Origin: Styela clava
Taxonomy: Eukaryota
Assembly (NCBI RefSeq): GCF_964204865.1
Contig: NC_135255.1
Location: 23,126,001 to 23,190,000, forward strand
Length of the DNA: 64,000 nucleotides
Direction of reading: 5' to 3'
In this document: positions 10,048-64,000 of the stretch, piece after piece
Numbering within the stretch: position 1 is the first letter of the stretch
Layout of the letters: the number at the start of each line of letters is the position of its first letter
The notes under the pieces: model-generated
What the model saw: the letters and a program-made list of their open reading frames with translations, nothing else
The model's database searches: none
What the model was told of the DNA's origin: nothing
Made by a program: the position numbers and the translations under genes

Positions 10048-10165
10048 AGCATAGGTGAAAATAGGTCAATCTAAACTGGTGGTTCTCAACTTTTAAATTC
10101 ATCAATTTAAATTCATCCTTTTGCTTATTTTAAAACTTCCTATTACTCACTATTTAATGATAAAG

Positions 10166-10404
10166 CGGTACTCAAGAAGTATGTGAACCAAGATGGCGGA
10201 CACCGGAACGTAGTATGTGTACCAGGTTAGGGTTAGGCCATAATTTCAGGTACAAATACTACGGGAGTCACTTGGCTAGTCTCCGAACTCGTCATTTAAC
10301 TAAAATAAGAATAATTAGAATAATATTATGGCATATCCCTAACCTGGTACACATATCCTGGTTCCGATGTCCGCCATGTAGGTTCACATACTTCGGGAGT
10401 GTCT
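10166..10404. mobile_element. MITE with ~75 bp imperfect terminal inverted repeats containing GGTTAGGGTTAGG; also at ~26561, ~42956, ~62928
   Basis: Left arm actcaagaagtatgtgaaccaagatggcggacaccggaac..gtaccaggttaggg pairs with the reverse complement of ccctaacctggtacacat..gttccgatgtccgccatgtaggttcacatacttcgggagt. Confidence 0.8.
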
Positions 10405-10510
10405 ATGAAACTACCTATTTGTTCAATCTTTAATGGACCCAGCTACTGTTATGGGCAAGCCACACTGCCGCTGTTGTAAATTTCAAGTAGTCGTGAAAGT
10501 GTGCATAAAT

Positions 10511-11009
10511 TAATGTTGCCATACGCCAGATTTTCCCTGACATGTCCGGTATTTGAGTGGTCAATTTTGCGTCAGGGAGAAATGCTAAAAAGTGCCTAAA
10601 TGTCAGATTTTGGAATACACAGAATTCCTGCTAGAAATTCTCGAGTTTCCAGATATTGCGCATCCACGAAAACCTATTTTTCAGAGATATGTCACATGCA
10701 AGCTTTTTTGTGCCACACGGATAGAGTCGCATTCAGATAATTGTGATGTCACATATGAACTGTATTACCAGCATTTTGTAATCGGTATTTTGGTTGCACA
10801 ACCTTTAGCTTACTCCGTGCTAGGGTTTGGTCACTAGTGCTAAAGATTAGGCAACAATTTTGCTTCTTTCGTTTTTTCTGTATTTATTCTATTCTCACAA
10901 GAAAGCGACGACAGCTTGTGCCCTTGCATACATAGTGAATTTATACCATAATAGAAATCATTAATTTTGTGTTTTGTGAGATTTTGTGTTTCCACATATG
11001 GTAACCCTA
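10511..11009. mobile_element. hAT-type MITE (~500 bp) with 8-bp TSD; also at 26906-27404 and in unit 3; mostly deleted in unit 4
   Basis: TIRs taatgttgccata / tatggtaacccta; flanks gcataaat (10503-10510) and gcatgaat (11010-11017). Confidence 0.7.
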
Positions 11010-11355
11010 GCATGAATAATTAATTATATTATACTAAATAATAGTAATACTGCGCGTGTACAAGGCAAATCGCTTCCCTTCCCTTGGAAAGAATTCCTTC
11101 CCTGTTGGGAAACGTTTTTCTCGAGCAGTTAGAGGTGGACCACAATGCTAGGCGCGAAATTAATTTTAATTTTGATGGAAAACTCCTCGTTTTCCTAGTT
11201 TCATTTCTTTATACGGTGTTTTCACTTTGTTGAGCAGAAATTGTTCACACAAAATGAGATATGGTATCTACCAATCAAAATAACACTATAAATGCCACTG
11301 GAATAATAAACAGAGGGCCATGAGTGCTAAAAGCCTCCAGACGGGGCCCACAAGC

Positions 11356-11362
11356 TATATAA
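11356..11362 (+). promoter_or_regulatory. Candidate TATA box (TATATAA); also at 27751, 44136, 63539
   Basis: Conserved in all four copies, ~240 bp upstream of the ATG. A putative 5'UTR intron gtatgt(11501)..ctcag(11565) lies between. Confidence 0.45.
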
Positions 11363-11593
11363 GGTTGGGAACCACTTTTCTACGCAATGCATTAAAAAGG
11401 CTAGACTCAGACTAGAAGCCAACAGTCATTCTTGATCCAAATCTAAAAGGCAGAACAAAGATGCAGCAGACTGTAATTAACCGGATTCCATTTGCGTGTT
11501 GTATGTGTTATCTACTGTGATTGTGTTGAGTAAGTTGTAACTTTAAAGTGTTTTATTCATCTCAGATTAATACGAGTATTATCGGAACTAACC

Positions 11594-14251
11594 ATGATCA
11601 AATATATAACCCTGTTTATGCTTATTGGAATAATTTCCACGGAGAACGCATCGTCTTTGGATAATTATGGGACAGTACTGACCGAGCAAATGAATCGATA
11701 TTGCCAAACGTATATGTGTCAACATACCGACCATACATCGGTAAGACAACAGAGAGAGCCGCGGGTTGGAAAAGCTGGGCCAGAGGGCCCACCTGGACTA
11801 CCCGGAATAGTCGGTCCCCGTGGACCTGCTGGAAGCGTCGGTCCACAAGGGGTCAAAGGTCAGCCCGGGGTTTCTGGACCATCGGGTGAAGTGAACTACA
11901 CCAGGATCGTGGAGATAGTTGGGGAGAAAATAGGTAAGATTTTATTTGGTTTAAAGCACGTTCTCTGTGGCAAATAATCAATACGGTCACCCATATTACT
12001 AAGCCGTTGTGTTGTATTTTACTTAGAATAGTAGTAGCGTGTATGAATTATGTATTTATTATATCATTGAATAAAAAAAAAACATTCAACTTTAACTGGA
12101 TGAACTGGAATGTCTTAACTGGACTTAATCAGGATTCCAGGTCTATGACACCAAAACTAAGAACTTTCGCTGGTCGCGGAAAATATCCTATTTTTTATAT
12201 AACATGACGGTTGAGCCTGGGCGTTAAAAAATTTCACAAAAACCTATCAAGCCATTTCATTTCACATACCATTGTTGAATTGAAGCAAGAAAATTACAAA
12301 ACGTGAAAATTAATTTATTCTGTTAATTAATTAAATCCAGTGTTTTATTAAAAAAATTATTGAATTTCTTTGTAACATTTCAGGAAAGTATCTTCTTCCT
12401 AACAAAGATTGTAGCAACTTCGACACAAATGAAATGGCTTTGCTTCAGAACGAGACTGGCGGTGTGTTCGAAATCAATACGATCAAGCTGGAACATCGAC
12501 TCAGGGTTTATTGCGACGTAGAAACAGATGGAGGGAAATGGATGGTAAGAAGTGGTATTTTCCAGAATGTTTCGCAATTTTATTTCCATATTCTTTTTTC
12601 TAAATTGTTAAAACGAAGCTCGTGATCTATGTGGTAACTTCAGAGGGAAATTAGCATCCTGTTTGCAAGGGGTTTTATAACGCACGATTTTTTCATGCCG
12701 TCTAGCTTCGTATGTCTGAAGTCTCAGTTTGTATATTGGCAACATAATTTTCAATCAGAACGTTATATCATATGAATTTTTCACATTAATATGGCACCTC
12801 CGAACAATGTACCAAATAAGCTAATGAATTTATTTGTAGAGAACCTTAAATATTGCAATTGCATTCCATGACTGATATTACATGGGTGGGTTATATTTTT
12901 TTATATTTTCGGCCAACAGGTTTTCCAACGAAGGTCTAACGGAATGCTCGATTTCGCCTCGTATAACTGGAAAGATTATGTGGAGGGATTTGGAAACCCA
13001 AAATCTGAATATTGGATGGGTAAGAAAAATGATTGTTGGAAAGGATAGGCTTGTAAAAAGAAAACTTTCCGAGGAACTTCTAGTTCTTATCATTTATAAC
13101 GTAACCTGGTTAACATATCACCAAAAAACTGTTAAATCTGGCAACTAGATTCTATGATATATTCAAAATCTTACTAAATTAAAACGATTAGAATTGAATG
13201 TAACTTTACTCCATGTGTGATAGCATGAATTTAAACTATGCTGAAGTGCAAATATTCTTCCAAATATAGTCGCTTGCGAGTCTTGTCCAGAGTGAATTCG
13301 TGAAACACATAATAAAATACAAATAATTTACAATATTCTCAAATTTGTTAGGATTGGAGAAACTTCATCGATTAACATCAGACGGTGAATTTGAACTCAG
13401 AATTGATTTGGAAGATTGGGAGGGAAATAAACGCTACGCCAAGTATTCGTAAGTATTTCATCAATTATATTTTACCCGTTTTTTACAGCTGTGGGTATTG
13501 CGGACGGAGACTCCGGTTTCTGAATCGGAAACGACAATTTTTGATTGAAAAAGCTGAATCATTCGGAATACTTTTCATATTTAATTGGAAGAATTTGACT
13601 CCGACAAATTTGTTTATTATTTCAAATCCGACTTCTCATCTTCATTAATGAAAAGTTTTCTGGTCGATTAATAGCTTTGTTTATGAGATTGACCAAGTTG
13701 ACTGAATAAGACAAAACTAGGAAATTATCGATAGTCTCAAAACAGCCGCCTTCCTATTAGTAACACTTTGTTTAGATTCTTACAAATCCGGTCGAGCATT
13801 TCTCGCGGCCTGTATCATCATATAGGTGATGCAAAACTGATTTTTCGGGTTTCAGGACTGAATATGAAATTCTATATTAAAACGCATTATATCTATGTTG
13901 TTGAAATAATATTTTTATTTCAGGTCGTTTTCCATCGGATCCGCTTCTACAAAATATCAACTCAATGTTGGAGGATATTCAGGAAATGCTAGGGATTCAC
14001 TTACAGAGGGACATAACGGAATGAAGTTTTCGACAAAGGATCAGGACAATGATATGGATGGTGGCAACTGTGCAAGTCATTTTAACAGTGGTGGATGGTG
14101 GTTTAATAAATGCTTTGACTCAAGCCTCAACGGTAAATATATCAGTGGAGGTCAGACTAGTAGAGATGGTGAAGGAGTCATCTGGGTACATTGGAAGGGA
14201 AGCAGATACTCACTGAAGTTCACGGAAATGAAATTCCGTCCGAGAGTGTAA
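11594..14251 (+). CDS. Ficolin-like secreted lectin (collagen + fibrinogen-related domain), copy 1, ~341 aa, 5 coding exons
   Basis: Exons 11594-11933, 12384-12544, 12920-13019, 13352-13448 and 13924-14251, all with GT..AG introns in compatible phases (1,0,1,2). The 1026 nt join into one ORF. Signal peptide [15 protein letters not shown]; YCQTYMC; 14 GXY triplets (GKA..GEV); fibrinogen-domain motifs [70 protein letters not shown]. Confidence 0.93.
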
Positions 14252-15085
14252 AGATGTTAAAACATCAATCAATCAAAACCAAGACTCTGGAGTTAGAGTC
14301 GCATTTTCAAAATTTTTCTAAATCGATGTTGCAATTTTGAACGAAAATTTAATTAAATACAAGATAAAACTAATCCTATAAAATTTTTGTTTTCCTGAAA
14401 ACTAAATCAAAAGTGTTTTTTCTAATTTTAAGAATTAAAATTTTGAATTCTTTCAGGTTCTTATTTGAAATTATAGGACCAAATTTTTTCACCTAATCAA
14501 CCTAGATCGAGTTTTCATTTGTAATACATTAATATAACAAATACCTGAACCAGCCATTTGGTCAATATTCTAAATATCCGTTTAATCTCGTATGAACACA
14601 TGTAGAATTATTTTCTGTTTCGGACCTTTAAATAGTAGAATGTAAATAAACAAATTGTTTCATGCAAATGTCTTAAAACTTTCATTAAATCTAGTAAATT
14701 CGTTGTTTTGAATTCATTCAAGTTTCTTCAAATGTACATAGTAATTTTTAATCATTTAATTCTTGATATCATGCTCAGATGTCAATAAATCATGTATTAG
14801 ACAACAGGCTTGATATCGTATTTGGGTTGGAGAACGGAAAGACAGCTGATTGCGAGCGCGATTGATGTTTGTAAATTTTACAAATGTACTTTTGTGGGAA
14901 TGGTCGTTTGCGAGAATGTTACTTTGTTGAAAGTCATTTTGCGAGAATAAAGTCTGTAGGAAACGACTATTTTCAAATAATGCAGTTTTGCGAGAACGAG
15001 ATTTTACAAGGGTGAGGTGTTTTGACAGAAATAAATTTATGAGATTAAGCGTTACCGCAAATGTAGTTCCAAATTTAAATGGGCT

Positions 15086-15376
15086 GGATAGGATAGGATT
15101 TACATATTTATCCCGGGGGAGAGGAAATCCGATACGACGGCTCGACCACATGGCAAACCACGCCTCTCGCCCGGTTATCATTCCATGTCAGGTATGGGAT
15201 GAGTTAGTTATTTGTTTGCGGAAGCATTGACTTGATGGTGGAGAAAGCCGTAACCGACCAGCGGTTACGTAAACCACCCTACGCCGGCGAGGAGTCTATC
15301 AATCCTCTCGCACATAACTATCCACGCGTGGGATTTGTGCCTGTGAACCACCGTGCCTTGTCACACCGCCGCGGCT
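15086..15376 (-). mobile_element. Putative tRNA-derived SINE with (ATCCT)n tail; also at 31481-31771
   Basis: Dispersed ~290 bp repeat with tail ggataggataggat. The homologous copy at 48484-48494 has an intact Pol III B-box GGTTCAAATCC on the minus strand. Confidence 0.7.
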
Positions 15377-17286
15377 AACTGTGACGTCAATCTTCAAATT
15401 TTATTGCTAACATACTTCAATTTTGATTACCTTACACTGGTTGTGGTGCGGAGCAATTATGTGCGATAGAATTGCTTGACTTCTACCCTTTCAGAGTGGG
15501 TTAAGTAACCCGTTGGTCTGTTACGACTTTCACCACCAAGCACATATACAGCGAATGACTGGTTGACTACTTTCATACTTTGCCAGATAACCAGACGATG
15601 AGACGAGTGTCTGTGGTTCGCGATATAATTAAAATCGTCTTATCACTTTTCTTCTATCATGGAATAATTGATTAGAAATTATCTCATTCTAACGTTCAAA
15701 TAAAAATTGCTTCTCCAGAATACTCCTATGTTGATGAGTATGGACATCTTACTTTCTCACATCTGCATTCGCGCAGAGACACATTTTTGCTGAAATCAAT
15801 CCTTGCAACATATTCTCTTGCTATTCTGTTTATGAGTAACACTGCTATAATATTGAGCGCTATTAACCAGTGGTTATATAACTTCTCGTGTTGGTTAGAA
15901 ATCCCTAAAAACTTCGAGCGAAGTCGAGTCTTTGATAAATTGGACTCTGATCATGTTCTGGACCCCCAAACATTGGCCATCCTGATAAATATACATTCTT
16001 GTAAACGCCCTATCAGGCAAATTTCTTCCAATTAAGACCGATTTTACGCGTTGGCTACCATCAACCAGTGACAGCATAAATCGTGAGAATGTGAGAAGCC
16101 ATCATTGCCATCACATCTCTGATTACTCCTTTAAGTACCGACCGCCGTCGCGTGCGGACGTGGCTATCTCGAGCCGAAGATATACATTCGAGAAGTGAAT
16201 CTCAGACTTAGTGACATCAATAAACAAATAACAGAAATAGCAGATTTTTGAATGATGGAATGGAAATGTGCAACATGGAAGATTTTTAAAGATATTGTGA
16301 AGATAAGTTCGGACGAAATTATGCTCTGCTCAAATATGTGACCGGATATACAAAAGTTAAACTGAACGAACTGATATTTGAAAATTCACAATCGATTTTT
16401 ACATTGGCGTGTTAACGTTTTAGTAGATTTTACTAGATATATGTTCGAGCATGGAACGGAAACATGCATTCGCACCTCATTCTGGGATTTTTCGGATTGT
16501 TTGTTTACATGCCGCATCACACGCACAGCGGATATTAAATTCACTGTTTTGTTTTTGAAAAAATTGCACGCAACTTGACCAAGTTAAACGCCTGAGTAAT
16601 GACCGCCGTCAATATTCATGTTCATTTGTTTGTGTTTGTGACTTGTTTTCTTTCTTTTTCGGTATGTGAACGCGTTTAATATGTTTTTAACTTATTTTTT
16701 GGGGTTTTGTTCACTTTCCAGGTGCTTCGCCTTAATCTTTTGTGTATATATGTTTATTTTGTTTTTGCGAATGAATCGAAATAAAATATTATCTTACTCT
16801 ATGCCAGTTCGCAAGTTTGAATCCTGTGGAAGATAATTACCGGTAAGTGCGAGAGAGAGTAGCTGGACTCCACAAACATGCCAGGGTGGTTCACGAAACC
16901 ACTTACCGAAATGGTCGGATCCTATTCTCGTACCCGACATGAACTGGTACTTGGTATATTTAATCCGGCTAGGAATGGAGATGATATAGTCCAAGCACAT
17001 ATTTAGAAACCCCCAATCGAGAGAAAAACATTAGTCTTTCAACATCTCTGTCAACAGGAGTTTTAGTATAAAAGTATATTTAAAATTCATATTTCCTTCA
17101 CACTTGATATAAAAAGATAGAATAACTAATAAAGCCAGGATTTGCATTTCCACAAGCAACGTTTAGCACATTCAAACAGCAAAATTTGGTTTTAGTTTGG
17201 TTGTGACGGCATCAGGTCGGCCAGAATAAATTACCCAACTAGTAGGATTTGGCCCGCGGCCCGTAGTTTGCCCATGTAATCAGTAA

Positions 17287-19609
17287 TTTTTTTTTTCACC
17301 ATTCCAAAGCACACAATGTGAATACACAATACAAGAAATAGGAAATATGGTACTTTAGGGTGAAGGGAGGCGCGAGACACCAAGACTGGTGATCGAGCAG
17401 CGACACCCATGACAAGTCTAACAGTAATAGATAAATAACAGTAATATATAAATCAAACAAACAATAAATATTAGAACAGGTTTACGTTAAAGTAAGTCGA
17501 GGCGACCTACATAAATAAATACAAAATAAATAAATGTGGAAGTAAATAGTATTGCTAGTTAGACAAAATATGTACATAAAGAAACTAGTATATTAGAAAA
17601 TTTTAGTCCATCATTGAAAACATGAATGCAGTAAACACTGTACGGTATCGGTACCCAAGCAAACAGCATATGGAAAAGACATCGAAATAACAAGTTCAAT
17701 ATTTTCAGAGTCTCCATCTATTTCAGTTACTGTGGACTGTGGGTGAAGTCAAGTGTTGAGCTGACAATGACAAGGGGTGGAGGGTGTCAGCACATCAAAC
17801 AGATGTGGTGACCCGAGACAGGTAAGATGAAAGCATGACCTTCTTATATTTTATTTTAAAAGAGAGATATGTGCTTTCACGTAAACTTTGTGGAATACTA
17901 TTCCATATTATGACACCTTTGTATTTCAGGGAATTTTGAGATTTGCTCAGTGAAAAGCGAGGTACAAAAAAATTGGACTTGGTTGAAGAGCGAGTGTTGT
18001 GTTCATGCACAGAGGTAAGCGAAACAAAATAATTGTCGAAAGCTGTGGGCAAGTGGTTGTTTTGAAATTGGTGCATAACTTTGGAGATCTCTAGAGTGTG
18101 AATGTCAGATAGTTTTAACACCCTTGTTTTATGGTATAGGGTGTTTAGGTTTGTACGAATAGATGCTCTAGAGAATGTTCTAACAGCTTTATTCTGTGAG
18201 ATCTCCAATTTAAGAATGTTACTGAGCCCCAAGCGGTTATGGCATATTGTATGTGGGATTGAAAGAGAGCAAAGTAGACAGTTCGCAGGGTGGCATCCTG
18301 GACATAATGTCTGAGTTTTCCCAATATCCCAACCGATCTCGACCATTTTTTATGTAATTCGATAGTATGGGTGTTCCATTTTAAATTATTATCTATATGG
18401 AGCCCGAGATATTTATAGGATTGGACGACTTCCAAGTCAACCCCCCTGATTTTGATTAGAATGTCGGCATGTGTTGTTAGCGATTTTCGGCTGAAAACCA
18501 TGACTTTCGATTTTTCGACATTTACAGTAAGTTTGTTGCATAACATCCACTCATATATTTTATTTATTTCTGAGTTTACAGTGTGTTGGAGTGTGGTCAA
18601 GTCTTTTCCACTAGCAAGCAGGCAGGCATCATCGGCGAAGAGCTTGGTTAGAAAATTAGAGCAGTTCGACAGGTCATTTACAGAGAGTAAAAAAGCCAAA
18701 GGCCCGATAATTGAACCCTGGACAATTCCGCACTGAATGGGCAACATTGGGGACTTATGAGAACCTAATTCAACAAATTGAAACGACCACTCAGGTAATT
18801 AGCTAGTAGTTTGCTTACATTACCTCTGAAACCATAGTGTTGCAACTTTTGAATAAGAATTTTGTGGTCCACCGTGTCAAAGGCTTTCTTTAGATCAAGG
18901 AAAGCACAACTCACATTTATCTATTTTGTCATAAATATATGATGTTAAGTCTAGGATGGCATGGCTAGTAGAGTGGTCGGGTTGGAATCCGAATTGGCAT
19001 TTATTGATCAAGTTGAATTTGGTACAAAAAATTAGCATTCTCTTGTATATTAACTTTTCCAGAATAAGACCAATTGAAGATAGAATAGAAATTGGCCGAT
19101 AATTAGAGGGATTATTTTTGTTGCCGCTTTTGAAGATTGGTATTACACCCGGCAATCTTTAATGAGGAGGGGAAAATACCATAATTGAATGATAAATTAA
19201 AAAAGTGACTCAATTCTGGAGAAATAATATCTGCGAATATTTTCAAAAAAAACGGGGAAATACCATCATGTCCAACTGCTTTGCCCTTTTTCAGGTTCAA
19301 TATTATTTGGCGAACCTCGGTAGATGTCGCTTGCCCCAGAAAGAAAGAATGCTGTGAGGGAGCACTCAAGAAAGCTTTGAAAGATTTCTTGATTACCATA
19401 TTATTCTTGAAAACAACAGAGGGGATGTGAAGCACACTTGGAAAACTATCAATGACATTATTAGAGTTAGGTCCAAAGATGAATCCATCGTCTCTGAATT
19501 GGAGCTTGAAAATGGTGCCACAGTATCCGACCCCGCCAGAATATCCGCCGAGTTCAATAAATTCTTTTCATCTGTAGGAAAGAAACTTGCTGACAATATT
19601 CCACATAGC
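17287..19609 (-). mobile_element. 5'-truncated, frameshifted non-LTR retrotransposon (CR1/L2 group), with inverted 5' segment 19391-19609
   Basis: Minus-strand RT motifs in several frames: PIFKSG..NYRPISIL, QFGF, DLKKAFDTVDH, QGSIIGP..NDL, LFADD, YKYLG, and C-terminal HEHNTR. 3' UTR ~17297-17794 and A10 tail (T10 at 17287-17296). The plus-strand piece encodes the upstream linker KHTWKTINDII..EFNKFFSSVG..IPHS. Confidence 0.9.
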
Positions 19610-20327
19610 ATGTGTTAGAGTAGGGACGGGCAAACACGACCCGGGGGCCGGATCCGTCCCCCGCCATATGTTTAACTCGTCTTATTGACTTGTCTCTCCT
19701 CTGAGTAAATCTGACAATCTTCACCCCCTTTCCCGGCTTCACAGCACTCAACCAGTAAACATTGCAGAAATATCAACTTGCCACTTGCGTGGACGATTTT
19801 TAATCTTAACCCATCGGTTCCCAAACCTTTTCTGTCACATTCCTCTCTTGGCCTATTTTTAAGCTCCTAATTCCTTTAACAATACAGATACAAACTCTAT
19901 TAAAATTTGTTACACAATATTCGACGCAACGTTTGTACATTTTGAATAGTTCATAATGTATGCATATATTATTTTCTTTAGAGGCTCTTAGGATATTGAT
20001 TTAACAACGATTATTTTATTCGACGTTTTGTTCAGTTTCAGGAGCCAGTGCTCTGTAATGAGCTTATATAATTTGGAATTTTCTACGGGCTGTTTGAGAT
20101 TGTTTTTTTGCGTGCGATGACGTCATCCAAATTAAAAATTGCCCATCTTGTTGCGGTTCCGTGTTCGCTGTTATCAGTTGCTCAGGCAAAGTTGTGAAGA
20201 TTGAAAGATTTTTTATGATGACATATTCGTTCTATTTCGTTTTGGTCGTGTCTGTATATTTTACCATTGCTCACTTGTTTCTATCATTATTGGTTTCTGG
20301 TGTAGGGATTTGTTCGGCGTCAAACGC

Positions 20328-20542
20328 GGGCACTCCCGTAGTATGTGTACCAGTTTAGTGTTAGGCCATAATTTTATTCCGATTTTTCCTATTTTAGTTC
20401 TATTACGAGTTCGAGGACTGTCTGTGTTAGTCAAGTGAATATACCCCTGTCCATAGGTTTCATTTTCTTTACACAACTTGTTGTAAAATGAACGAACAAA
20501 GTAAGTTACTTCCATATTGGTACACATACTTCTGGAGCACCC
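20328..20542. mobile_element. 215-bp MITE with 25-bp TIRs and 6-bp TSD; relatives at 19-185 (partial), 22598-22807, 23721-23983, 36723-36937, 56533-56746, 58765-58973, 60104-60350
   Basis: gggcactcccgtagtatgtgtacca ... tggtacacatacttctggagcaccc flanked by aaacgc/aaacgc; the 23721-23983 copy is flanked by agaata/agaata. Confidence 0.8.
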
Positions 20543-33600: not shown

Positions 33601-33681
33601 ACGGCATCAGGTCGGCCAGAATAAATTACCCAACTAGTAGGATTTGGCCCGCGGCCCGTAGTTTGCCCATGTAATCAGTAA

Positions 33682-52743: not shown

Positions 52744-52764
52744 CCCCCCCCCCCCCCCCCCCCC
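52744..52764. repeat. C21 homopolymer
   Basis: Read directly; ~120 bp beyond the Penelope-like ORF stop. Confidence 0.85.
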
Positions 52765-52882
52765 TTCAATTGGGGCTAAGGGGCGTGGAATTTGGACCCG
52801 ATATGTGTAATCTGACATCCCAACCGCTTTGCCATTGGGTCGGCTTATAGAATATTTTGGTTGTGTTCTTTGTGTTCATGCT

Positions 52883-53830: not shown

Positions 53831-54479
53831 TGCGTGCAAAAACGTAAAACGTAATCTGACGTTACCCAAAGAATATTCTCATTCATAAAATGCATGACTA
53901 ATCATACGCGGCCACACATAGTTCATACTTAATTGCGATTCTTGGAAGCGATCATCTCTGGCCCGTGTTAAAGAAAATGCGTGTATGTCGTGTATGATCG
54001 TCTACTACGCAAATAATAAGTTAATTAAGGCGTAGCACTGTTAAATAAACTGTACTGTTAAAAATTACATGCGTTCGATAGTTTTTAGGTTGATTAAACA
54101 ATCTCGACAGCCAAATAATATGGAATGCATACGCTAATGTTTTTATTTACAAAATTATATTCGAAGTTTTCTCCGAGCTTGGAATCATGATAATTAGTCG
54201 TTTTATAAAAAAAAAATTATCTGATGTTATCCAAGGAATATGCACATTCATAAAATGCATGACTAATTATACACGGCCATACAAGATCTATGCCTAATTT
54301 TGATTCTTGTATTGGCCTACTGTGGCCCATGTTGAACAGAATACGTGTATGACTTGTAGGATCGTCTACTACGGAAATAATAAGTTATGGCGTAGTGCTG
54401 TTGGAAATTACGCAAAAACTATATGCATTTGATAGTTTCTAACTTGACTAAGCATTCCCAGTGGACTCGTGTATCTCAA

Positions 54480-54768
54480 ACGATGGGGCGCGCCCCACAA
54501 GAGCGTTGTAGACAAATTTTGAGAAGGCGCGAAGCTGATTAAAACTAAAAGTATTTGTTATATTTTATCTTGACCGCCTTATTTTAGATATTTACATTTC
54601 GTTAATTTGGATATTCACGTTCCATCCACGTATTTTTAACGTGGTTTTTGAATAAAACATACTATCTCATATTTGTAGCATAATATCAGTTAGGTATTTT
54701 TGAGATGGGACGCGAGACTTGACAAATTCTAAAAAAGTGCGCTGTTTAAAACGTTTAGGAACCAATGC
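54480..54768. mobile_element. Degraded hAT-like MITE
   Basis: tctcaaacgatggggcgcgcccc ... gcgctgtttaaaacgtttaggaaccaatg resembles Charlie-type ends; TSD not resolved. Confidence 0.35.
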
Positions 54769-57700
54769 AATGACCATTAAATATAATTGCACCTGTGGTT
54801 TCTGTAACTTTTATGTGAGTTCTATTTTCATTTTTAGTTCTTTATCTTGGATGCAATTAGATCAGATATATTTGGGCGTTTTAGTCTTTACTTTAAGTTA
54901 GATTTCGGATCAGGACCTAGCCAGATATTGTCAATGGGGTCGGTTCTAAAATTTTTATTTGCCAAGTTAGACCGCAACAGAAAGCGAACTTAGCCGGAGA
55001 CCGAAAATTGTGTTTTTTTTCAAAGTCTTGAGGGTCTAAAAATCGTTATTTAAAAGTGTGACTAAAATTTACTATGTATGACGCAGAATAATGCTTCTTT
55101 TTGCATTTCAAAAGAGGGGGTTCCGACGCGTAAAACCTCTACTACTACCAGATAATGGCTCTGCGCCTATAAATTTTCTTATAGAAACTTCACCAAATTT
55201 TTGAAAGCATGTATCGATCTTATGACGCGAAAGAAATTTTGAATATGACGTTCAAGCAACATAACGGAAATGGATCAGCGTCAAAATACGTGGATATAAC
55301 AAATGCTTAACGTGTAAACGTCAACGCAAGTATCAAGTCGATAATATATTCCTACTGGTCGAGTGTCGGAATAGGATGAAGATTGTGAGATTTATTATGA
55401 GGGAGAGGAAAGTCGATACGCGACGTGTCGTCCTGTTACCAGTGTAAAGAAAATGCGTGTATGACAAGTAGGAGCGTATACTGAGGAATTATGTAATATC
55501 AAGTTAAACAGCACAAAGAATTCATATGCGTTCAGCAACAATAAATGGCTCAGCGGTCTTTCTATTTTCAGATATTGGCTCTGCGTCTAAAATTTCCTTT
55601 GATACTTCGCTAGATTGTTCAAAGCGTGTATCAATCTTATGGCGTGAAAGAAAATTTGAATACGACGTTCAAGCGACGTACCGGAAATGAATCAACGTCA
55701 AAATACGTGAATATAACAAATGGCTATAACAACGTTTTGCCAAACGGGGCCCTATTGTTTCCCGGGAAGGATATTTTCACTCATTTAGTGTTATTTGCAA
55801 TGCCTATGTATATGCATACATTATGAACTATTCAAAATGTACAAACGTTGCGTCGAATATTGTGTAACATATTTTAATAGAGTTTGTATCTGTATTGTTA
55901 AAGGAATTAGGAGCTTAAATATAGGCCAAGAGAGGAATGTGACAAAAAAGGTTTGGGAACCGATGGGTTAAGATTAAAAATCGTCCACGCAAGTAGCAAG
56001 TCGATATTTCTGCAATGTTTACTGGTTGAGTGCTGTGAAGCGGGATAGGGTGAAGATTGTCAGATTTACTCAGAGGAGAGGCAAGTCAATAAGACGAGTT
56101 AAACATATGGCGGGGGACGCATCCGGCCCCTGAGTCGTGTTTGCCCGTCCCTACTCTAACACATATTAATTTCTTTATAGGTTCTTAGGAGATTGATTTA
56201 ACAACGATTATTTTATTCGACGTTTTGTTCAGTTTCAGAAGCCAGTGCTCTGTAATGAGCTTGTATAATTTGGAATTTCTACGGGCTGTTTGAGATTGTT
56301 TTTTTGCGTGCGATGACGTCATCCAAATTAAAAATTGCCCATGTTGTTGCGGTTCCGTGTTCGCTGTTATCAGGTGCTCAGGCAAAGTCGTGAAGATTGA
56401 AAGATTTTTTATGATGACATATTGTGTGTATTCGTTCTATTTCGTTTTGGTCGTGTCTGTATATTTTACCATTGCTCACTTGTTTCTATCATTATTGATT
56501 CTTGGTGTAGGGATTTGTTCGGCGTGAAACGCGGTACTCCCGTGGTATGTGTACCAGTTTAGTGTTAGGCCATAATTTTATTCCGATTTTTCCTATTTTA
56601 GTTCTATTACGAGTTCGAGGACTGTCTGTGTTAGTCAAGTGAATGTACCCCTGTCCATAGGTTTCATTTTCTTTACACAACTTGTTGTAAAATGAACGAA
56701 CAAAATAAGTTACTTCCATATTGGTACACATACTTCTGGAGCACCCAAACGCGTGTAAAAACGTGCTATAAAGCAAACACCAGTTGTTCTATTTACTTAC
56801 ATATAACAGTCAACTTTCTGAAAATTGCAACACGCACTATGAGATCAAAAGCAAGTGATCGAGTTTTGGCAATAATTTGGCACGCGTTTATGAAATGGAC
56901 TTTCCCAATGTAGCAAAAATTGTTCCAGACAAAATTAGTCAATAGCTGTGTCAATTTAAGGTCAATACTAGAACAAATATTTTATTACCAGATAATTAAA
57001 GCGAACAACGTAGCAGACGACTGTTACATTTTGTTTCATAAATCGATTATTAAATACCAATTTGGAATTTTAGATGATAATGACACCACAATTGGAAAAA
57101 TTAGTGCTATCATCGAAACTAGTTTAATGTTCGCAGACGTTTAACAAATTGTTTTTTGGTTTTTATTTGTCAGATCGAGTTTATTGAACACTTTTATCTT
57201 TTATAGGGTTAGCGTGGGCTTGCAGATAAACCATCAAAGTTACGTTTTGTAGTTTGAGTTATTAGAACAGATTGAAAGTTCATGGACTTAGCACAAAATA
57301 TGTAAATCTTTTAACTTAGAGCTTTGTATACGTTGCTTTCATTAAACATTTTTCTCGGACACCGAAAAGTGCAAGCAGACGCTAATTTGAATATAGAAAA
57401 TGTGGAATGTTCTTGAGCTCCTCTTTCCACAACTTTTACTTGGAACAACATCTGTTACCGATGTGCGATATCTTGCGATACTTGTAAGTGAAGGAGCAAA
57501 AGTTATGTATTTTGGTTGTTATTTGTCAACGCCAGTTGATAGAACAGTTTGAACGTTTATATGGATATTGCAAGAGATGTAATATGTAATAATTTCAGCT
57601 TTGAGATTTTGGTACAAAAATTGTTTTATGTAATTGACTATCTTGCAGACGCGCCTCCGAAGTAACGTATTTTGTATATAATTTGTCTATTTCAGTTAAC

Positions 57701-60700
57701 ACTTTTAGTAAATTAATCAAAAAATATGCAACATATAACAGTTTTAGCTTGGAGCTTCTTATACATCAATTTAGCGTATTCTGGTTATTGTTTGTTTGCA
57801 ATAAAAAATGACAATTGTAATATATGACAAGTTTAGCTTTTGGTGGGACGTTTTTTAATGTCTTCCACCCAGAAGAAAGTGATTTCCCCGATTTGCGAAG
57901 AGCTACTCTACTCACAAAATTTGTTCTGGTTTTTATTTGTACTGTACAAGAACTCTACTGGTTATGTAATGAGCTACCTTATAGAAGCGCTATTATCGAA
58001 ATGCTTAATAGTTTTTTTTTCTATTCGTCTTCTAGTTAACAGTGGAAGCGTAAGATATGCAATGTACAATAATATTTATAGCTGTTAGTTTTTATCTTTT
58101 TTTCTATATGACAATTTTCCAGGATTTTCACTCAAAACAAGGCCCTATACGGGCTTCCACTAATATGCAAACGAATACCATGTAGACGCGCCATAAATGA
58201 AATACCTTTTTGGTATATTTAATGATTTCAACTTAGAATTCCAACTTAAAAACTTTCACTAGTTCTCGTTGCTAGAATTTTGTGATAACTTTGTGGGATT
58301 TTCTATGTATGGAACTTTATTCAAATGGTTTAGAGTGAGCATATGAAGTGGAATTCATGGTGAGTTAGGATTCACATATTTATCCCGGGGGAGAGGAAAA
58401 CCGATAACACGGCTTAACCATATGGAGAACCACGGCCTCTCGTCCGGTTACCAGTCCATGTCGGGTATGGGATTAGTTTTAGGTATTTGTTTTTCGGAAG
58501 CATGGAGTTGCGGCTCAATGTTGTTGTCGCTAGAATGCTATTGATTTTATTAATTTCAGAAACTTTCTGTGTGTTCTATGTCTCCACATTTTCTGTTATC
58601 TGGTGTCGTTCAGGCAAAGTCGTGAAGATTGAAAGTTTGTCCATACATCTACTGTGACAGATTACATATCCGTTGTATTTCGTTTTGGATTTTGTTGCTC
58701 ACCTGTTTTCATAGTTTATATCATTATTGGTCTCTGGTGTAGAGCTTTGTTCGGCGTCGAACGCGGGTACTCCCGTAGTATGTGTACCAGGTTGGGATTA
58801 GGCCATAATTTTATTCTGATTTTTGTATTTTATTTCTATCAAGAGTTCGGGGACTGTCTGTGTTAGCCAAGTGAATACACCCCCTACCCATAGGCTTCCT
58901 TTAAACAACTTGATGTAAAGTAGGCGAACAAAATTAGTTAACTCCATTTTGGTACACATACTTCTGAAGCGCCCAAACACGTGTGAAAATCGTTCTATAG
59001 AGCAAAAAAAACAGTTGTTCCCTTTACTTGCATATAACAGTCAACTTTCTGAAAATTGCAACTCGCACAATGAGATCAAAAGCATGTGACAACTTGGCAC
59101 GAGTTTATGAAATTAGGCCTTCCACCATGAAGCTATTGTTTCAGACACAATTAATCAATAGCTGTGTAGGACCAGTAAATTTAAGGTCACTACTAGAAAA
59201 ATATATTTTAGTATTAGATGATTAAAGCGAACAACACAGCAGACGACTATCACATTTTGTTTCATACATCGATTATTAAATAATAGTTGAAAATTTTAGA
59301 AGATAATGACAAGACAATTAAAAAAGTTATTGCTGTCATCGAAACTAGTTTAACGTTAGCAGAAGTTTAACAAAGTGTATTCTGGTTTTTATTTTTCAGG
59401 TCAAATTAATTTAACAGTTTTATCTTTTATAGGGTTAGCATAGGCTTGCAAATAAACCATCAAATGTATACAATTAGTTTGAGTTATTAGAACAGATTGT
59501 AAGTTCGTGGGCTCAGGTCAAAATATGCAAATTTAATAATTTAACTTAGATCTCTGTATACGTAGTTTTTTTATATCCTTTGTCTGAGAGAACGCACTGT
59601 ACAAGCCACTGATTTGAAAAGTTGCTCTGCTTTGTGTTTCTCGGTTTAGAGTAAGCAAAGCAATAACTTTAGCTTTGCCTTTGAGCTTATTATATATCAA
59701 TTTATTTCTTCCCTTTAAACAAGACATCGTAGAACAACCACTCAAATAATGTATTGTAGTTTTATTTTTTACTCGGAACAAGGCCTAGTACGAGCAGTTA
59801 CTAATATGTGTAAATGCATGCCAGAGAGCAAGAAGGCATTTGTTCTATTTACTTACATATTAACAGTAAACTTTCTGAAAATTACAACACGCACTATGAG
59901 ATCAAAAGCAAGTGATCACGTTCAAGCAACAACTTAGCATGAGTTTATGAAATTAGGACTTTTCGGATTTAGCAAAAATTGTTCCAGACATAATTAATCA
60001 ATTGCTGTTGAGAATTTAAGGTCACAACAAGTCAAAACAAAATAGGATATTGAATGCGTTATAAAAGAGCGCTACGATGCGCCACACCGCCGAGTCAAGA
60101 ATAGGGTACTCCTGTAGTATATGTTAGGCCGTAATTTCATTCTGATTTTCTATATTTTAGTTCTATTACGAGTTCGGGGACTGTCTGTGTTAGCCAAGAG
60201 GATATGCCCCTGCCCACAGATTTCAGTCCCTTTACACAACTTGATGTAAAGTAGGCGAACAAAATTATTATTGATACACATACTTCTGGAGCACCAAATA
60301 ATGTTGGAAAATTATTCAACAGTAAATACCGATACACTTCTGGAGCGCCGAGAATATAAACCATGGTTCACCATATGATTAAGTCTAAATCATTGGCTTT
60401 TACAAGAATAAACCTATCTAAACCTATCACAGTATGGATATTACAACTCCAGAACTCAGCCATTACACAAAAAAGATAGACAGAGAGTTTATTTTGAAAA
60501 CCCCATAATATAGGCCTACACTGATTCAAATGAAGAATTTTGAAAAGCGAACAAATCCTTTGAAAAAGTTTGTGTCAAAATAAAATTATACTTATTGTCG
60601 CGGTATAAGATCTTGCTGCTGTGGTTGTAAATAAGTCAGAAGACTAAAGGATTCCAGATTGGTTATTTATTGTACGGCAACTTCACAATTTGAAACTTGA

Positions 60701-62809
60701 AACAGCAAAAACAGAGCACACAACGAAACGCAACCCACCTCCAGACCAACGGCCGGAGAACGAGAACAAGAGATATATTTTCTCTCGCACGTGTAATTGG
60801 GTGGTCGGAGTCAAGACCCGGTTAAAACTGCCCAAATTAGGTCTGGTATAGTTTAGTATCACAAGTACTTCCAGTATTCCGCACGGTGGAATTTTTTGAA
60901 ATTTTAATATGTGTTTCATGAATCTCTATAAAAGATACGGTCTCAATGATTCGGGTGAGAAAAAATTATTTCTTACATAAATTACGCTTTAACTCAGTTA
61001 AATTGAGAATGCCTTAAATGTCTTCCTTAAATCTGGGGGAATTTCCCTACTTTCCGCACGGTGAAATGTTTTAAAATTGTAGTATATGTTTTACATATGT
61101 CCACCAAAAATACTGTGTTGATGGATTGGATGAGAAAGAATTATTTCTTGCATAAATTAAGCTTCAACTAAATTGACGACTTTGTCGATAAATAAGGGCA
61201 AATTTATATCTATCTATTCATTTTAACGAAAAAAATGTAGGTTTCAATCATTCTCTGTATTATTATGTTTCTTCTTACTTTTGATTCCTAAAAAGGGGAA
61301 TTGCCTCATTAATTCCACCCATTTTGTCGCAATTAACTATTGCGTATTTAAGAATGGTTGCGTTTATGGTTCAATGCATAGTAATTCTATTCATACTTCG
61401 TGGACAAATTTATTTGAGCAAACTTGCATAAAATAATTTTAACGTGGAAATATCTCGGACATCATGAGGTGAAGTTCTTTATTTTCATGGTTCATGGTTC
61501 AATGCATGGGAATTCCATCCATAGGTCGTGGGGCTTTGGTTCACACGCAATGAGGAGCTGAGATATCGAGTTGTTGAATTGTGAACAAATCTCTCGTTAT
61601 TTATTCGTGTCGTATTTTGCCCACGACTCTCTCTCTCTTTTATCTTTTAGAGATTATATCGCATAAAATGTGGCGCAACTTCAATCTCATTCATATTTCG
61701 CTTTGTCAGTGTCTGATGATAAAATAATTTTAGTTCAGTGTAGTTGTAGTGATAGGTGGTTTAGATTGGCAGTTTTTGATGTTATTGGAATTGAGGTTGC
61801 ATTTCTAAATTAACCTAAGTCGGTTAGATTCGATATTTTAAGAAGATCATTTTGAACATTTTGCCATATCAAAATTTAATGATTTATAGTTGCTATATAG
61901 ATTTTAAAAATTAGATTGTTTGGAGCTGAAACCAATATAATTAGCCACGGCTTCTGGTTTCGACCAACGGCCGGCAACCAACTTGCTTAATGGTAAATAA
62001 GTTCATGGACGCCATCTTGTGCCATATTTGGGAAACGCGAAACAATGGAGTCTTATGGGAAATTTTCGTCGTGTTGTTGTACCGAATCGAATAAGTCCGC
62101 TGTTATAAGGGCTAGAATGAAACTGAAGGGTGGATTTTGAACTTTAAGATATATGCTATCTAAATATATAACGCAGATTTTATAGTGATACGCCAATTTG
62201 AGGCTGTAAAATGTCTCCGCAACAATCAATCCTACAATGTCATTTGTTCTTCTAGCGCATGGCTGAGCAATAGGGCATTATGGAGCTTGACAGACGAAAA
62301 ATGTTAACCAGAAAATTGAAACGGCCATTGAAGCAAAGTTGGGTCGGCCGGAAATTTGACGAATAAACACAACTTTTCATCTGTGACATCATAAGGAAAG
62401 CCTTTGTCATATTGTTAATTATAACGATTAGAATGACTAATTTACTTCGGAAGCAACTCGGAACCGGTATACTTGTCTTCAAAGACAATTTAGTATACTA
62501 AAAATGTAATTTGGCCAACATGAAAGGATATAAGCATGTACGGCTAAGATTCTACTTCAAAATACGACCTTGAAAATTTTTCTACCTAAAATATTAGTGA
62601 AAATAATAGGTATGTTTCAATAATTGTGTTGGAACTTTTCATAAGGCGCCGTGTTGAATTGTCGAGAACATTAGGCACAAGATGGCGTCCATTGTCTGAG
62701 CGTTGCCCCGCTCATATTATATATACGCTTTGGTTCCGACCTGCTCCGACTCCAGACCTGGTTTAAACCATCTATTTTTGAAACCTGATTTTTGAAAAGG
62801 CTCTAGACA

Positions 62810-64000
62810 AGCATAGTTAAAAATAGGTCAATCTAAACTGGTGGTTCTCAGCTTTTAAATTCATCAATTTAAATTCATCCTTTTGCTTATTTTAAAACTT
62901 CCTATTGCTCACTATTTAATGATAAAGCGGTACTCAAGAAGTATGTAAACCAATATGGCGGTCACCGGAACGTAGTATGTGTACCAGGTTAGAGTTAGGC
63001 CATAATTTCAGGTACAAATACTACGGGAGTCACTTGGCTAGTCTCCGAACTCGTCATATAACTAAAATAAGAATAATTGGAATAATATTATGGCATATCC
63101 CTAACCTGGTACACATATCCTGGTTCCGATGTCCGCCATGTAGGTTCACATACTTCGGGAGTGTCTATGAAACTACCTATTTGTTCAATCTTTAATGGAC
63201 CCAGCTACTGTTATGGGCAAGCCACACTACCGCTGTTGTAAATTTCAAATAGTCGTGAAAGTGTGCATAAATTAATGTTGCCATACGCCAGATTTTTCCT
63301 GACATGTCCGGGATTTTAGTGAACCACAATGCTAGGCGCGAAATTGATTTTAATTTTGATGGAAAACTCCTCGTTTTCCTAGTTTCATTTCTTTATACGG
63401 AGTTTTCACTTTGTTGAGCAGAAATTGTTCACACAAAATGAGATATGGTATCTACCAATCAAAATAACACTATAAATGCCACTGGAATGATAAACAGAGG
63501 GCCAGAGTGCTAAAAGCCTCTAGACGGGGCCCGCAAGCTATATAAGGTTGGGAACCACTTTTCTACGCAATGCATTAAAAAGGCTAGACTCAGACTAGAA
63601 GCCAACAGTCATTCTTGATCCAAATCTAAAAGGCAGAACAAAGATGCAGCAGACTGTAATTAACCGGATTCCATTTGCGTGTTGTATGTGTTATCTACTG
63701 TGATTGTGTTAAGTAAGTTGTAATTTTAAAGTGTTTTATTCATCTCAGATTAATACGAGTATTATCGGAACGAACCATGATCAAATATATAACCCTGTTT
63801 ATGCTTATTGGAATAATTTCCACGGAGAACGCATCGTCTTTGGATAATTATGGGACAGTACTGACCGAGCAAATGAATCGATATTGCCAAACGTATATGT
63901 GTCAAGATACCGACCATACATTGGCAAGACAACAGAGAGGGCCGCTGGTTGGAAAAGCTGGGCCAAAGGGCCCAACTGGACCACCCGGAATAGCCGGTCC
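62810..64000. repeat. Tandem unit 4 (partial)
   Basis: Same unit start and promoter, with a ~578 bp deletion at ~63322 relative to unit 1. Confidence 0.9.
63777..64000 (+). CDS. Ficolin-like gene copy 4, 5' part of coding exon 1 (runs off the window)
   Basis: ATG at 63777; reads [74 protein letters not shown], open to the window end. Not in the supplied ORF track. Confidence 0.85.
   Translation, partial: MIKYITLFMLIGIISTENASSLDNYGTVLTEQMNRYCQTYMCQDTDHTLARQQRGPLVGKAGPKGPTGPPGIAG

What the first reader, a model, noticed from the sequence alone, without database searches (positions are those of the whole stretch)
10048..64000. Expanding, recombining tandem array of ficolin-like pattern-recognition genes
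Seen: at least four head-to-tail units, each with a collagen + fibrinogen-domain gene that the ORF track shows only as fragments. There is one apparently perfect duplicate, one mosaic paralog and one chimera. Known: ficolins are lectin-pathway recognition molecules, and fibrinogen-related proteins are diversified immune receptors in invertebrates. Inference: this locus generates a repertoire of binding specificities through duplication, segmental exchange and selection on the binding loops.
Basis: partly seen in the sequence, partly recalled or inferred. Interest (0 to 1): 0.8.

Follow-up and report, generated by a model that had tools for sequence, protein, structure and literature searches.

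The report
Recombining sea-squirt ficolin-like gene array
This is a real, expressed tandem array of nine collagen-stalked fibrinogen-head (ficolin-like) genes in a sea squirt. It grows and reshuffles by unequal crossing-over, and the ligand-pocket residues of the heads are under strong diversifying selection, which is a clear new example of a known way of evolving immune-type lectin families.

Summary
From 10048 the window holds head-to-tail units: A, B, C and the start of D. Each carries a 5-exon gene for signal peptide + Cys segment + short collagen stalk + complete fibrinogen C domain.

- **Extent:** the array continues beyond the window, giving 9 genes in about 180 kb. Seven are intact and two are broken.
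- **Perfect duplicate:** units A and B are identical over 16,601 bp.
- **Mosaic paralogs:** B and F each combine the 5' end of their downstream neighbour with the 3' end of their upstream neighbour, the signature of unequal crossing-over. D and G carry conversion-like patches.
- **Expression:** contigs from three RNA-type runs join all four introns exactly at the predicted GT..AG sites.
- **Selection:** the last exon has omega about 1.5 and M2a vs M1a 2dlnL of 44-53. The other exons give 0-4.5. Positions homologous to the FIBCD1/ficolin acetyl pocket carry the changes (permutation P = 6e-5), and the canonical pocket Tyr is absent.

Untested: immune function, ligand binding and MASP docking. 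I also could not show that the perfect A/B copy is biological rather than an assembly artefact.

Ficolin expansion in Styela clava (54 genes) is already published, and this scan noted a similar array on other DNA of this genome. I file this as a new member of a known kind, of moderate interest.

The parts
10048..26442 (+). Array unit A (16,395 bp); the left edge of the array is at 10048
   Evidence: Self-BLAST, offset identity, boundary alignment
26443..42837 (+). Array unit B. It is identical to A except for 2 sites in its first 42 bp, which match C
   Evidence: Triplet analysis gives 2 C-like sites, then 745 A-like informative sites
42838..62809 (+). Array unit C (19,972 bp), a mosaic paralog with its own transposon insertions
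   Evidence: segment distances
62810..64000 (+). Start of unit D, cut by the window end. It lacks 575 bp found upstream in A, B and C
11594..11933 (+). Gene A exon 1: signal peptide, 2-Cys segment, 13 G-X-Y triplets, neck; intron phase 1
   Evidence: Pfam Collagen 1.4e-7; donor GT; RNA joint 11931>12382
12384..12544 (+). Gene A exon 2: start of the fibrinogen C domain
   Evidence: Pfam Fibrinogen_C positions 4-45; RNA joints on both sides
12920..13019 (+). Gene A exon 3
   Evidence: Pfam Fibrinogen_C positions 42-80; RNA joints 12543>12919 and 13018>13351
13352..13448 (+). Gene A exon 4
   Evidence: Pfam Fibrinogen_C positions 77-109; RNA joint 13448>13924
13924..14251 (+). Gene A exon 5: Ca2+ loop, P-subdomain and ligand pocket, stop codon. 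This is the positively selected exon
   Evidence: Pfam Fibrinogen_C positions 109-221, 2.5e-33; PDB matches; codon models
27989..30646 (+). Gene B, identical to A. Exons 27989-28328, 28779-28939, 29315-29414, 29747-29843, 30319-30646
44374..47275 (+). Gene C, intact. Exons 44374-44716, 45211-45374, 45953-46052, 46367-46463, 46948-47275
   Evidence: Pfam
63777..64000 (+). Gene D exon 1, first 224 nt. The gene runs on to 65997 in continued coordinates, lacks exon 3 and is out of frame
26485..26690 (.). The 206-bp window in which the A/B duplication crossover must lie. It is identical in A (10090-10295), B and C (42880-43085) and overlaps the left arm of the hairpin element
10170..10400 (.). MITE-like hairpin element at the head of the unit, also present at 26565-26795 and 42960-43190. 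It is high-copy across the genome
   Evidence: Inverted arms; dispersed copies at 94-97% identity; depth spike
17795..19611 (-). Degenerate LINE reverse-transcriptase fragment in unit A, and again in B at 34190-36006. It is absent from C
   Evidence: Pfam RVT_1
53049..53822 (-). GIY-YIG (Penelope-like element) ORF, found in unit C only
   Evidence: Pfam GIY-YIG 5.2e-5

Best explanation
The locus is a tandem array of nine paralogous genes, four of them at least partly in the window. Each encodes a small secreted protein of about 340 aa. The protein has a signal peptide, a two-cysteine N-terminal segment, a short collagen stalk (13 G-X-Y triplets, 22-23 in one paralog), a short neck and a complete fibrinogen-type head. 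This is the ficolin architecture.

Shown here:
- The genes are transcribed and correctly spliced.
- The array evolves by birth and death. New copies arise by unequal crossing-over between misaligned units: B is the C start joined to the rest of A, and F is the G 5' part joined to the E 3' part. Patches move between copies by conversion-like exchange (D and G). Two copies have decayed: D has lost exon 3 and F has an 11-nt deletion.
- The exon that builds the Ca2+ loop and ligand pocket is under strong diversifying selection. The rest of the protein is conserved.

Inferred:
- The products assemble through the stalk and cysteines into multivalent lectin-like recognition molecules.
- The heads have diverged in ligand specificity, giving a germline-encoded repertoire most likely used in humoral innate recognition.
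- They may dock a MASP-type protease through the stalk lysine.
For: - Architecture: Pfam finds Collagen plus Fibrinogen_C positions 3-221 over five exons with canonical splice sites, and the exon lengths sum to multiples of 3 in seven genes. The exon 5 peptide matches FIBCD1, ficolin-1/-2, tenascin and ANGPTL heads at 1e-23 to 7e-27.
- Expression: contigs of three runs from three studies cover exons only. They join 11931>12382, 12543>12919, 13018>13351 and 13448>13924 at GT..AG. Their variant letters fit A/B-type, E/F/G-type and I-type genes.
- Array size: nine genes.
- Recombination: segment distances and trees conflict with 83-100% support. B has 2 C-like then 745 A-like informative sites. 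F has 47 G-like then about 360 E-like sites. D has a C-like tract at 63819-65163 in an E-like backbone. G switches from F-like to C-like to I-like.
- Selection: Nei-Gojobori dN/dS for exon 5 is 0.58-2.4, against 0.03-0.22 for exon 2. My own GY94 maximum-likelihood fit gives exon 5 M0 omega 1.5 and M2a vs M1a 2dlnL of 44-53 on three topologies, with 23% of codons at omega about 8. Control exons give 0-4.5.
- Pocket mapping: the a-priori ligand-contact positions from the FIBCD1 structure (PMC3908420) are all variable. Six of the eight have NEB posterior > 0.9 (hypergeometric 3e-4). Their pN is 0.375 against pS 0.089 (P = 6e-5).
- Local expansion: in exon 5 the array genes are 78-90% identical to each other in protein. 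The best outsider is 73% and the rest are <=60%.
- Literature: 54 ficolin genes are reported as an expanded family in S. clava (PMC7540406).
Against: - No functional data were available: ligand binding, oligomer state, MASP docking and response to infection are all untested.
- The canonical acetyl pocket is not kept. The Tyr431 equivalent is Arg/Lys or a variable residue, and Ala432 is kept only in gene H. Ficolin-like ligand chemistry therefore cannot be assumed.
- The G-K-A/T-G-P motif sits in the first collagen triplet and is preceded by Val, not Hyp.
- The exon 5 peptide is no closer to vertebrate ficolins than to FIBCD1, tenascin or ANGPTL2, so orthology is not shown.
- Recombination inside exon 5 can inflate site-model likelihood-ratio tests, and the codon models were my own implementation rather than PAML or HyPhy.
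- The zero-mismatch A/B copy could be an assembly loop. The only raw DNA run gave a depth of 0-6, too thin to count copies.
- The species name comes from earlier notes of this scan and was not re-verified here.
Confidence: 0.7

Rival explanations
1. The perfect A/B duplicate is an assembly artefact, a repeat loop traversed twice through the 206-bp stretch shared by A and C. On this reading the true array has one A-type unit and eight genes.
For: There are no mismatches over 16,601 bp. The junction pattern (C-like first 42 bp, then A-like) is what a graph loop through the A-end/C-start junction would produce, as well as what a real crossover would produce. No independent copy-number evidence could be obtained.
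Against: The same recombinant signature is seen in F, between E and G, with small but non-zero divergence of 0.1-0.4%. This shows that such duplications do occur in this array. Modern long-read assemblers rarely invent a 16-kb unit.
Confidence: 0.25
2. The proteins are not pathogen sensors. They would serve another extracellular recognition task, such as larval settlement or metamorphosis cues, tunic or haemolymph matrix assembly or clotting, or self/non-self recognition between individuals or gametes. The diversifying selection would come from that task.
For: The S. clava genome paper links expanded complement and lectin genes to metamorphosis (PMC7540406). The canonical acetyl pocket used by ficolins for microbial ligands is not conserved.
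Against: The collagen stalk with fibrinogen head and N-terminal cysteines is the build of humoral defence collagens. Multi-copy arrays with pseudogenes and pocket-focused omega >> 1 are typical of host-pathogen interfaces. There is no nesting in a polycystin gene as in the Themis loci.
Confidence: 0.25
3. The high dN/dS in exon 5 reflects relaxed constraint on redundant copies, or an artefact of recombination mixing old and young tracts. It would not reflect adaptive diversification.
For: Whole-exon omega is only about 1-1.5. Exon 5 lies at the edge of homogenised tracts: intron 4 is 0.6-6% divergent while the downstream flank is 13-24% divergent. Recombination is known to inflate M2a tests.
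Against: About 60% of exon 5 codons have omega near 0, and 69 of 109 columns are invariant. Reading frames are intact and the genes are transcribed. Changes pile up, often with 4-5 different residues, at positions predicted independently from the FIBCD1 structure. The result holds on a star tree, and exons 1-4 show nothing under the same code.
Confidence: 0.1

Closest known systems
Ascidian and vertebrate ficolins (Halocynthia roretzi ficolins; human FCN1-3; the 54 'ficolin' genes counted in the Styela clava genome paper, PMC7540406)
   Same: They share the signal peptide, Cys-containing N-terminus, collagen-like stalk and C-terminal fibrinogen domain. They also share the Ca2+ loop (D-x-D-x-D), the P-domain disulfide and a G-K-X-G-P lysine motif in the stalk. 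The family is expanded in this species.
   Different: The stalk is very short (13 triplets) and the lysine motif lies in its first triplet. The S1 acetyl-pocket residues Tyr431/Ala432 (FIBCD1 numbering) are not kept and are hypervariable between paralogs. No specific sequence affinity to vertebrate ficolins over FIBCD1, tenascin or ANGPTL was seen. Lectin-pathway activity is untested.
FIBCD1 and tachylectin-5A acetyl-binding fibrinogen heads (PMC3908420)
   Same: FIBCD1 is the best solved-structure match to exon 5 (7e-27). The Ca2+ site, the Cys401-Cys414-type disulfide and the overall P-domain framework are shared.
   Different: FIBCD1 is a membrane protein with a coiled coil, not a collagen stalk. 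Its pocket residues are conserved, whereas in this array they are the most variable positions.
Invertebrate FREP/FBN multigene families (Biomphalaria FREPs, mosquito FBNs, oyster FREPs) and other clustered, fast-diversifying immune families such as sea urchin SpTransformer/185-333 (PMC7588048, PMC5103432)
   Same: These are tandem clusters of recognition genes that diversify by duplication, unequal crossing-over or gene conversion and positive selection, and they include pseudogenes.
   Different: The array genes have a collagen stalk instead of IgSF domains. There is no evidence here for somatic diversification. This is a chordate (tunicate) lineage.

Membership tests
Ficolin (collagen + fibrinogen-domain defence collagen) | N-terminal signal peptide followed by a short Cys-containing segment for inter-chain disulfides | tested here: met
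   Exon 1 starts with [15 protein letters not shown], a hydrophobic leader judged by inspection (no predictor was run). It also has two Cys in N-R-Y-C-x-T-Y-M-C, conserved in all nine genes.
Ficolin (collagen + fibrinogen-domain defence collagen) | Collagen-like G-X-Y repeat domain | tested here: met
   Pfam Collagen at 1.4e-7 and 1.2e-7, above the cut-off. There are 13 uninterrupted triplets in A-G and I, and 22-23 in H.
Ficolin (collagen + fibrinogen-domain defence collagen) | Complete C-terminal fibrinogen C domain with Ca2+ site and P-domain disulfide | tested here: met
   Pfam Fibrinogen_C positions 3-221 over exons 2-5. D-x-D-x-D and the two Cys align with FIBCD1 Asp393/Asp395 and Cys401/Cys414 (PMC3908420).
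Ficolin (collagen + fibrinogen-domain defence collagen) | Conserved S1 acetyl-binding pocket (FIBCD1 numbering: Tyr405, His415, Tyr431, Ala432, Trp/Tyr443) | tested here: not met
   By the HMMER alignment, Tyr405 corresponds to F/Y/W and His415 to F/H/Y. Tyr431 corresponds to R/K, or to a variable D/S/N/H residue. Ala432 corresponds to G/W/S/A, with Ala only in H. Trp443 corresponds to S/M.
Ficolin (collagen + fibrinogen-domain defence collagen) | [quoted passage not shown] | tested here: inconclusive
   G-K-A-G-P (A-D, I) or G-K-T-G-P (E-H) is present in every gene. It forms the first triplet of the stalk and is preceded by Val, not Pro/Hyp. Gene H also has a mid-stalk P-G-K-V-G-L.
Ficolin (collagen + fibrinogen-domain defence collagen) | Binds acetylated or microbial ligands and activates complement through MASPs | not testable with these tools
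   This needs recombinant protein, glycan arrays and MASP binding or C3/C4 deposition assays.
Ficolin (collagen + fibrinogen-domain defence collagen) | Orthology to vertebrate FCN genes | tested here: inconclusive
   Exon 5 scores 97 bits to FIBCD1, 89.7 to ficolin-2, 89.7 to ANGPTL2 and 89.5 to tenascin-R.
Molluscan-type FREP (IgSF + fibrinogen domain) | One or two N-terminal IgSF domains upstream of the fibrinogen domain | tested here: not met
   Exon 1 gives only a Collagen hit. No exon between the signal peptide and the fibrinogen domain encodes an Ig domain.
Birth-and-death multigene recognition array | Tandem paralogs that include recent duplicates, recombinant copies and pseudogenes, with positive selection at the binding surface | tested here: met
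   There are nine genes. A equals B, and E, F and G differ by 0.1-0.4%. D and F are broken. Recombinant signatures are and selection.

The most novel reading that the evidence does not exclude
A chordate ficolin-type array in which the canonical acetyl pocket of the head has been abandoned and its lining diversified under strong positive selection (omega about 8 on about a fifth of the exon 5 codons). The animal would then carry a germline repertoire of collagen-stalked lectins with distinct, non-acetyl ligand specificities. The array would still be changing copy number by unequal crossing-over at a MITE-bearing unit junction, so that individuals differ in gene number and content, as in snail FREPs or sea urchin SpTransformer genes.
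Probability: 0.35. Interest if true: 0.6.

Novelty: new member of a known kind. Interest (0 to 1): 0.45.

Why it matters
Tunicates are the closest living relatives of vertebrates and have no antibodies. How they widen innate recognition is therefore of comparative interest. This locus gives a compact and unusually readable case.

- The unequal crossing-over products can be read directly from runs of informative sites.
- The selective signal falls on residues whose structural role is known from FIBCD1, ficolin and TL5A crystal structures.
- This yields testable predictions: different ligand profiles for the heads of A, C, E, H and I; possible MASP docking through the first-triplet lysine; and copy-number polymorphism among individuals.

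The general phenomenon is already known, both as ficolin expansion in S. clava and as diversification of FREP-like families. The value here lies in the detail and testability.

Tried and rejected
- **Copy number of A/B from reads.** The only raw-read DNA run (X13, Hi-C) gave a depth of 0-6 per bin and none on the left flank. No copy count is possible from it.
- **Whole-protein steps.** I made no whole-protein homology search, structure prediction or cross-species phylogeny. Everything was done exon by exon, and split codons were dropped.
- **Big protein searches.** I did not run the search for homologous proteins or the search of protein representatives, because Pfam and PDB already place the protein. 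As a result the closest named proteins and the species label were not re-verified. 'Styela clava' comes from earlier notes of this scan and fits PMC7540406.
- **FREP (IgSF) membership.** Rejected, because there is no Ig exon.
- **Themis-type gamete locus.** Rejected, because the genes have a collagen stalk and are not nested in a polycystin gene.
- **Other genes in the units.** ORFs 14756-15181(-), 20261-20572(-), 9270-9656(+), 6997-7380(+) and 2504-2884(+) gave no Pfam hit. Apart from the ficolin-like genes I found only transposon debris.
- **Failed call.** One search failed on a thread setting and was repeated.
Full report
**1. What is there**

The window is G000:C6:23126001-23190000 of a 377-Mb animal genome. 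Earlier follow-up notes of this scan call it Styela clava. I did not re-verify the name.

Self-BLAST shows a head-to-tail repeat that starts at 10048. An offset comparison shows that 10090-26690 equals 26485-43085 base for base, which is 16,601 bp at a period of 16,395 bp.

The units are:
- A, 10048-26442
- B, 26443-42837
- C, 42838-62809
- D, from 62810 to the window end, where it is cut

There are no N runs. Upstream of 10048 there is no fibrinogen exon.

**2. The genes**

Stop-to-stop translation and Pfam give one + strand gene per unit in five exons.
- Exon 1 carries a hydrophobic leader, a two-Cys segment and a Collagen hit.
- Exons 2-5 tile Fibrinogen_C profile positions 3-221 without a gap.
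- Every intron has GT..AG, and the intron phases are 1, 0, 1, 2.
- Gene A is 1,026 nt of coding sequence over 11594-11933, 12384-12544, 12920-13019, 13352-13448 and 13924-14251.

The exon 5 peptide matches the solved heads of FIBCD1 (7e-27), ficolin-2, ANGPTL2 and tenascin-R (about 2e-24), ficolin-1 and tachylectin-5A.

I never joined the exons for a search, a fold or a tree.

**3. The array is larger than the window**

A Pfam scan of the whole genome finds at least 161 fibrinogen exons, including a run on this contig downstream of the window. I fetched 140 kb more and located nine genes, A to I, over about 180 kb.

In continued window coordinates:

| Gene | Coordinates | State |
|---|---|---|
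| A | 11594-14251 | intact |
| B | 27989-30646 | intact, identical to A |
| C | 44374-47275 | intact |
| D | 63777-65997 | exon 3 missing, out of frame |
| E | 81980-84794 | intact |
| F | 96213-99016 | 11-nt deletion in exon 5, out of frame |
| G | 110434-113244 | intact |
| H | 141882-144267 | intact, 9 extra collagen triplets |
| I | 185928-188590 | intact |

In a tree of exon 5 peptides with 40 other fibrinogen exons of this genome, the array genes group together with two dispersed relatives (UFBoot 70). They are 78-90% identical to one another. The nearest outsider is 73% (C6:9.45 Mb) and all the others are <=60%. This is a local expansion.

**4. Expression**

One search found 12 runs of the same organism label that hold the sequence or part of it, plus one raw-read run added by species label. 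I laid three RNA-type runs from three studies, and one Hi-C DNA run, on 8500-14400.

- The RNA-type contigs cover exons and leave introns at zero depth.
- They join 11931>12382, 12543>12919, 13018>13351 and 13448>13924, each at GT..AG. These are exactly the four predicted introns.
- A loose end in X7 at 13924 carries the last 15 letters of exon 4.
- Comparing the variant letters with the paralogs: the X5 exon 2 contig is A/B-type (1 difference in 145), the X7 exon 1 contig is E/F/G-type, and the X9 exon 1-2 contigs are I-type.
- X7 and X9 also cover exon 5 at >=95% identity. Only A/B can supply that, because every other paralog differs by >=10.5% there.

Several paralogs are therefore transcribed and spliced. 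Tissue and condition are unknown, because the run names are coded.

**5. Recombination**

Per-segment distances and trees conflict strongly:

| Segment | Groupings |
|---|---|
| Upstream 1 kb | (A,B,C), (F,G), (D,E,I) |
| Exon 1 to exon 2 | (C,D), (E,F,G), (A,B,I); intron 1 is unalignable between types and exon 2 is 31% divergent |
| Intron 4 | (C,G), (D,E,F) |
| Downstream 1 kb | (D,E,F), (G,H,I) |

Supports for these groupings are 83-100%.

Runs of informative sites give the mechanism.
- B has 2 C-like sites (26452-26484) followed by 745 A-like sites.
- F has 47 G-like sites (94725-97911) followed by about 360 E-like sites.
- In both, the middle gene has the 5' end of its downstream neighbour and the 3' end of its upstream neighbour. 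This is the expected product of unequal crossing-over that adds a unit.
- D is an E-like unit with a C-like tract at 63819-65163 (exon 1 to exon 4) and no exon 3.
- G is F-like to 112620, C-like at 112638-113003 and I-like from 113245.

The A/B crossover must lie in 26485-26690. This window overlaps the left arm of a 230-bp hairpin element. The element is dispersed through the genome and piles up enormous depth in all runs.

**6. Selection**

Nei-Gojobori estimates:

| Exon | dN/dS |
|---|---|
| 2 | 0.03-0.22 |
| 1 | 0.3-1.1 |
| 3 | 0.12-0.77 |
| 5 | 0.58-2.4 |

In exon 5, 31 of 109 columns change the amino acid and only 9 change synonymously. The changes are clustered and often multi-state.

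I wrote a GY94 F3x4 maximum-likelihood implementation of M0, M1a and M2a.
- Exon 5 gives omega 1.5 under M0.
- M2a vs M1a gives 2dlnL = 44.1, 46.1 and 53.4 on the ML, an alternative and a star topology. About 23% of codons (21% on the star tree) are at omega about 8 and about 60% are near 0.
- The same code gives 2.95, 0, 4.5 and 1.65 for exons 1-4.

To define the pocket independently, I took the ligand-contact residues from the FIBCD1 crystal paper (PMC3908420): Tyr405, His415, Tyr431, Ala432 and Trp443, plus Lys381 (equivalent to TL5A Arg186), Glu398 and Asn413. I mapped them through the HMMER alignment to exon 5 columns 54, 65, 81, 83, 94, 28, 46 and 63.
- All eight columns are variable (hypergeometric 2e-5).
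- Six have NEB posterior > 0.9 (3e-4).
- Their mean pairwise pN is 0.375, against an exon-wide pS of 0.089. This is reached by 6 in 100,000 random sets of 8 codons.

Caveats: recombination inside exon 5 can inflate site-model tests, the code is mine, and the mapping rests on one pairwise alignment.

**7. How ficolin-like is it**

The architecture is that of a ficolin.

The stalk carries G-K-A-G-P or G-K-T-G-P. [quoted passage not shown] Here it forms the first triplet and is preceded by Val, so docking is uncertain.

The Ca2+ loop and the disulfide are kept. The acetyl pocket is not:
- The Tyr431 position is Arg/Lys, or a variable residue.
- Ala432 survives only in H, and is Trp in C.
- His415 is Phe in A/B and Tyr in D/E.

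These heads probably do not bind acetyl groups in the canonical way and probably differ from one another.

**8. Known or new**

The S. clava genome paper already reports an expanded ficolin family of 54 genes and links complement genes to metamorphosis (PMC7540406). Ascidian ficolins are established lectin-pathway candidates (PMC5465252). Diversifying tandem FREP-type and other immune arrays are well known. This scan also noted another ficolin-like array on other DNA of this genome.

What this analysis adds is locus-level detail: the nine-gene map, the crossover signatures, and the pocket-focused selection with loss of the canonical pocket.

**9. Open point**

I could not test whether the zero-mismatch A/B copy is biological. 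The Hi-C run was too thin, and a graph loop would leave the same junction pattern as a real crossover. The F case, with the same signature at 0.1-0.4% divergence, makes a real and very recent event the more likely reading. I put it at about 0.7.

Noticed in passing
window 10170-10400 (also 26565-26795 and 42960-43190): A 230-bp hairpin element with arms 10170-10244 and 10325-10400. It is dispersed on many contigs at 94-97% identity and reaches depths of tens of thousands in the RNA-type runs, so it looks like a MITE. One copy heads every array unit, and its left arm lies in the A/B crossover window.
   Followed up: partly
window 19610-19968 versus 56164-55809: A 359-bp segment beside the LINE fragment of units A and B is inverted relative to its counterpart in unit C (96% identity).
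   Followed up: no
window 49905-52037: A local tandem duplication of about 1.07 kb inside unit C (49905-50974 versus 50972-52037, 93% identity). It is absent from A and B.
   Followed up: no
window 53049-53822 (-): A 257-aa ORF ending in a GIY-YIG nuclease motif, probably a fragment of a Penelope-like retroelement. It is found only in unit C.
   Followed up: partly
continued coordinates 141882-142305 (locus L008, C6:23267882-23268305): Exon 1 of gene H has 9 extra collagen triplets and a mid-stalk P-G-K-V-G-L. This resembles the MASP-binding motif more than the first-triplet lysine of the other paralogs does.
   Followed up: no
G000:C6:9450262-9450618 (L015): A dispersed fibrinogen exon 13.7 Mb away on the same contig. 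It is 73-74% identical to the array's exon 5 peptides and is the nearest relative outside the array.
   Followed up: no
window 8500-10047: The left flank of the array had almost no reads from the Hi-C DNA run of the same species label, at >=95% likeness. The array itself had depth 1-6. This could mean a divergent or absent flank in that individual, or a sampling gap.
   Followed up: no
window 20168-21142, 22429-23407 (and 36563-37537, 38824-39802, 56364-57344, 58593-59618): Each unit contains two copies of a repeat of about 1 kb at 79% identity. I found no protein hit for it, so it is an uncharacterised intergenic repeat.
   Followed up: no
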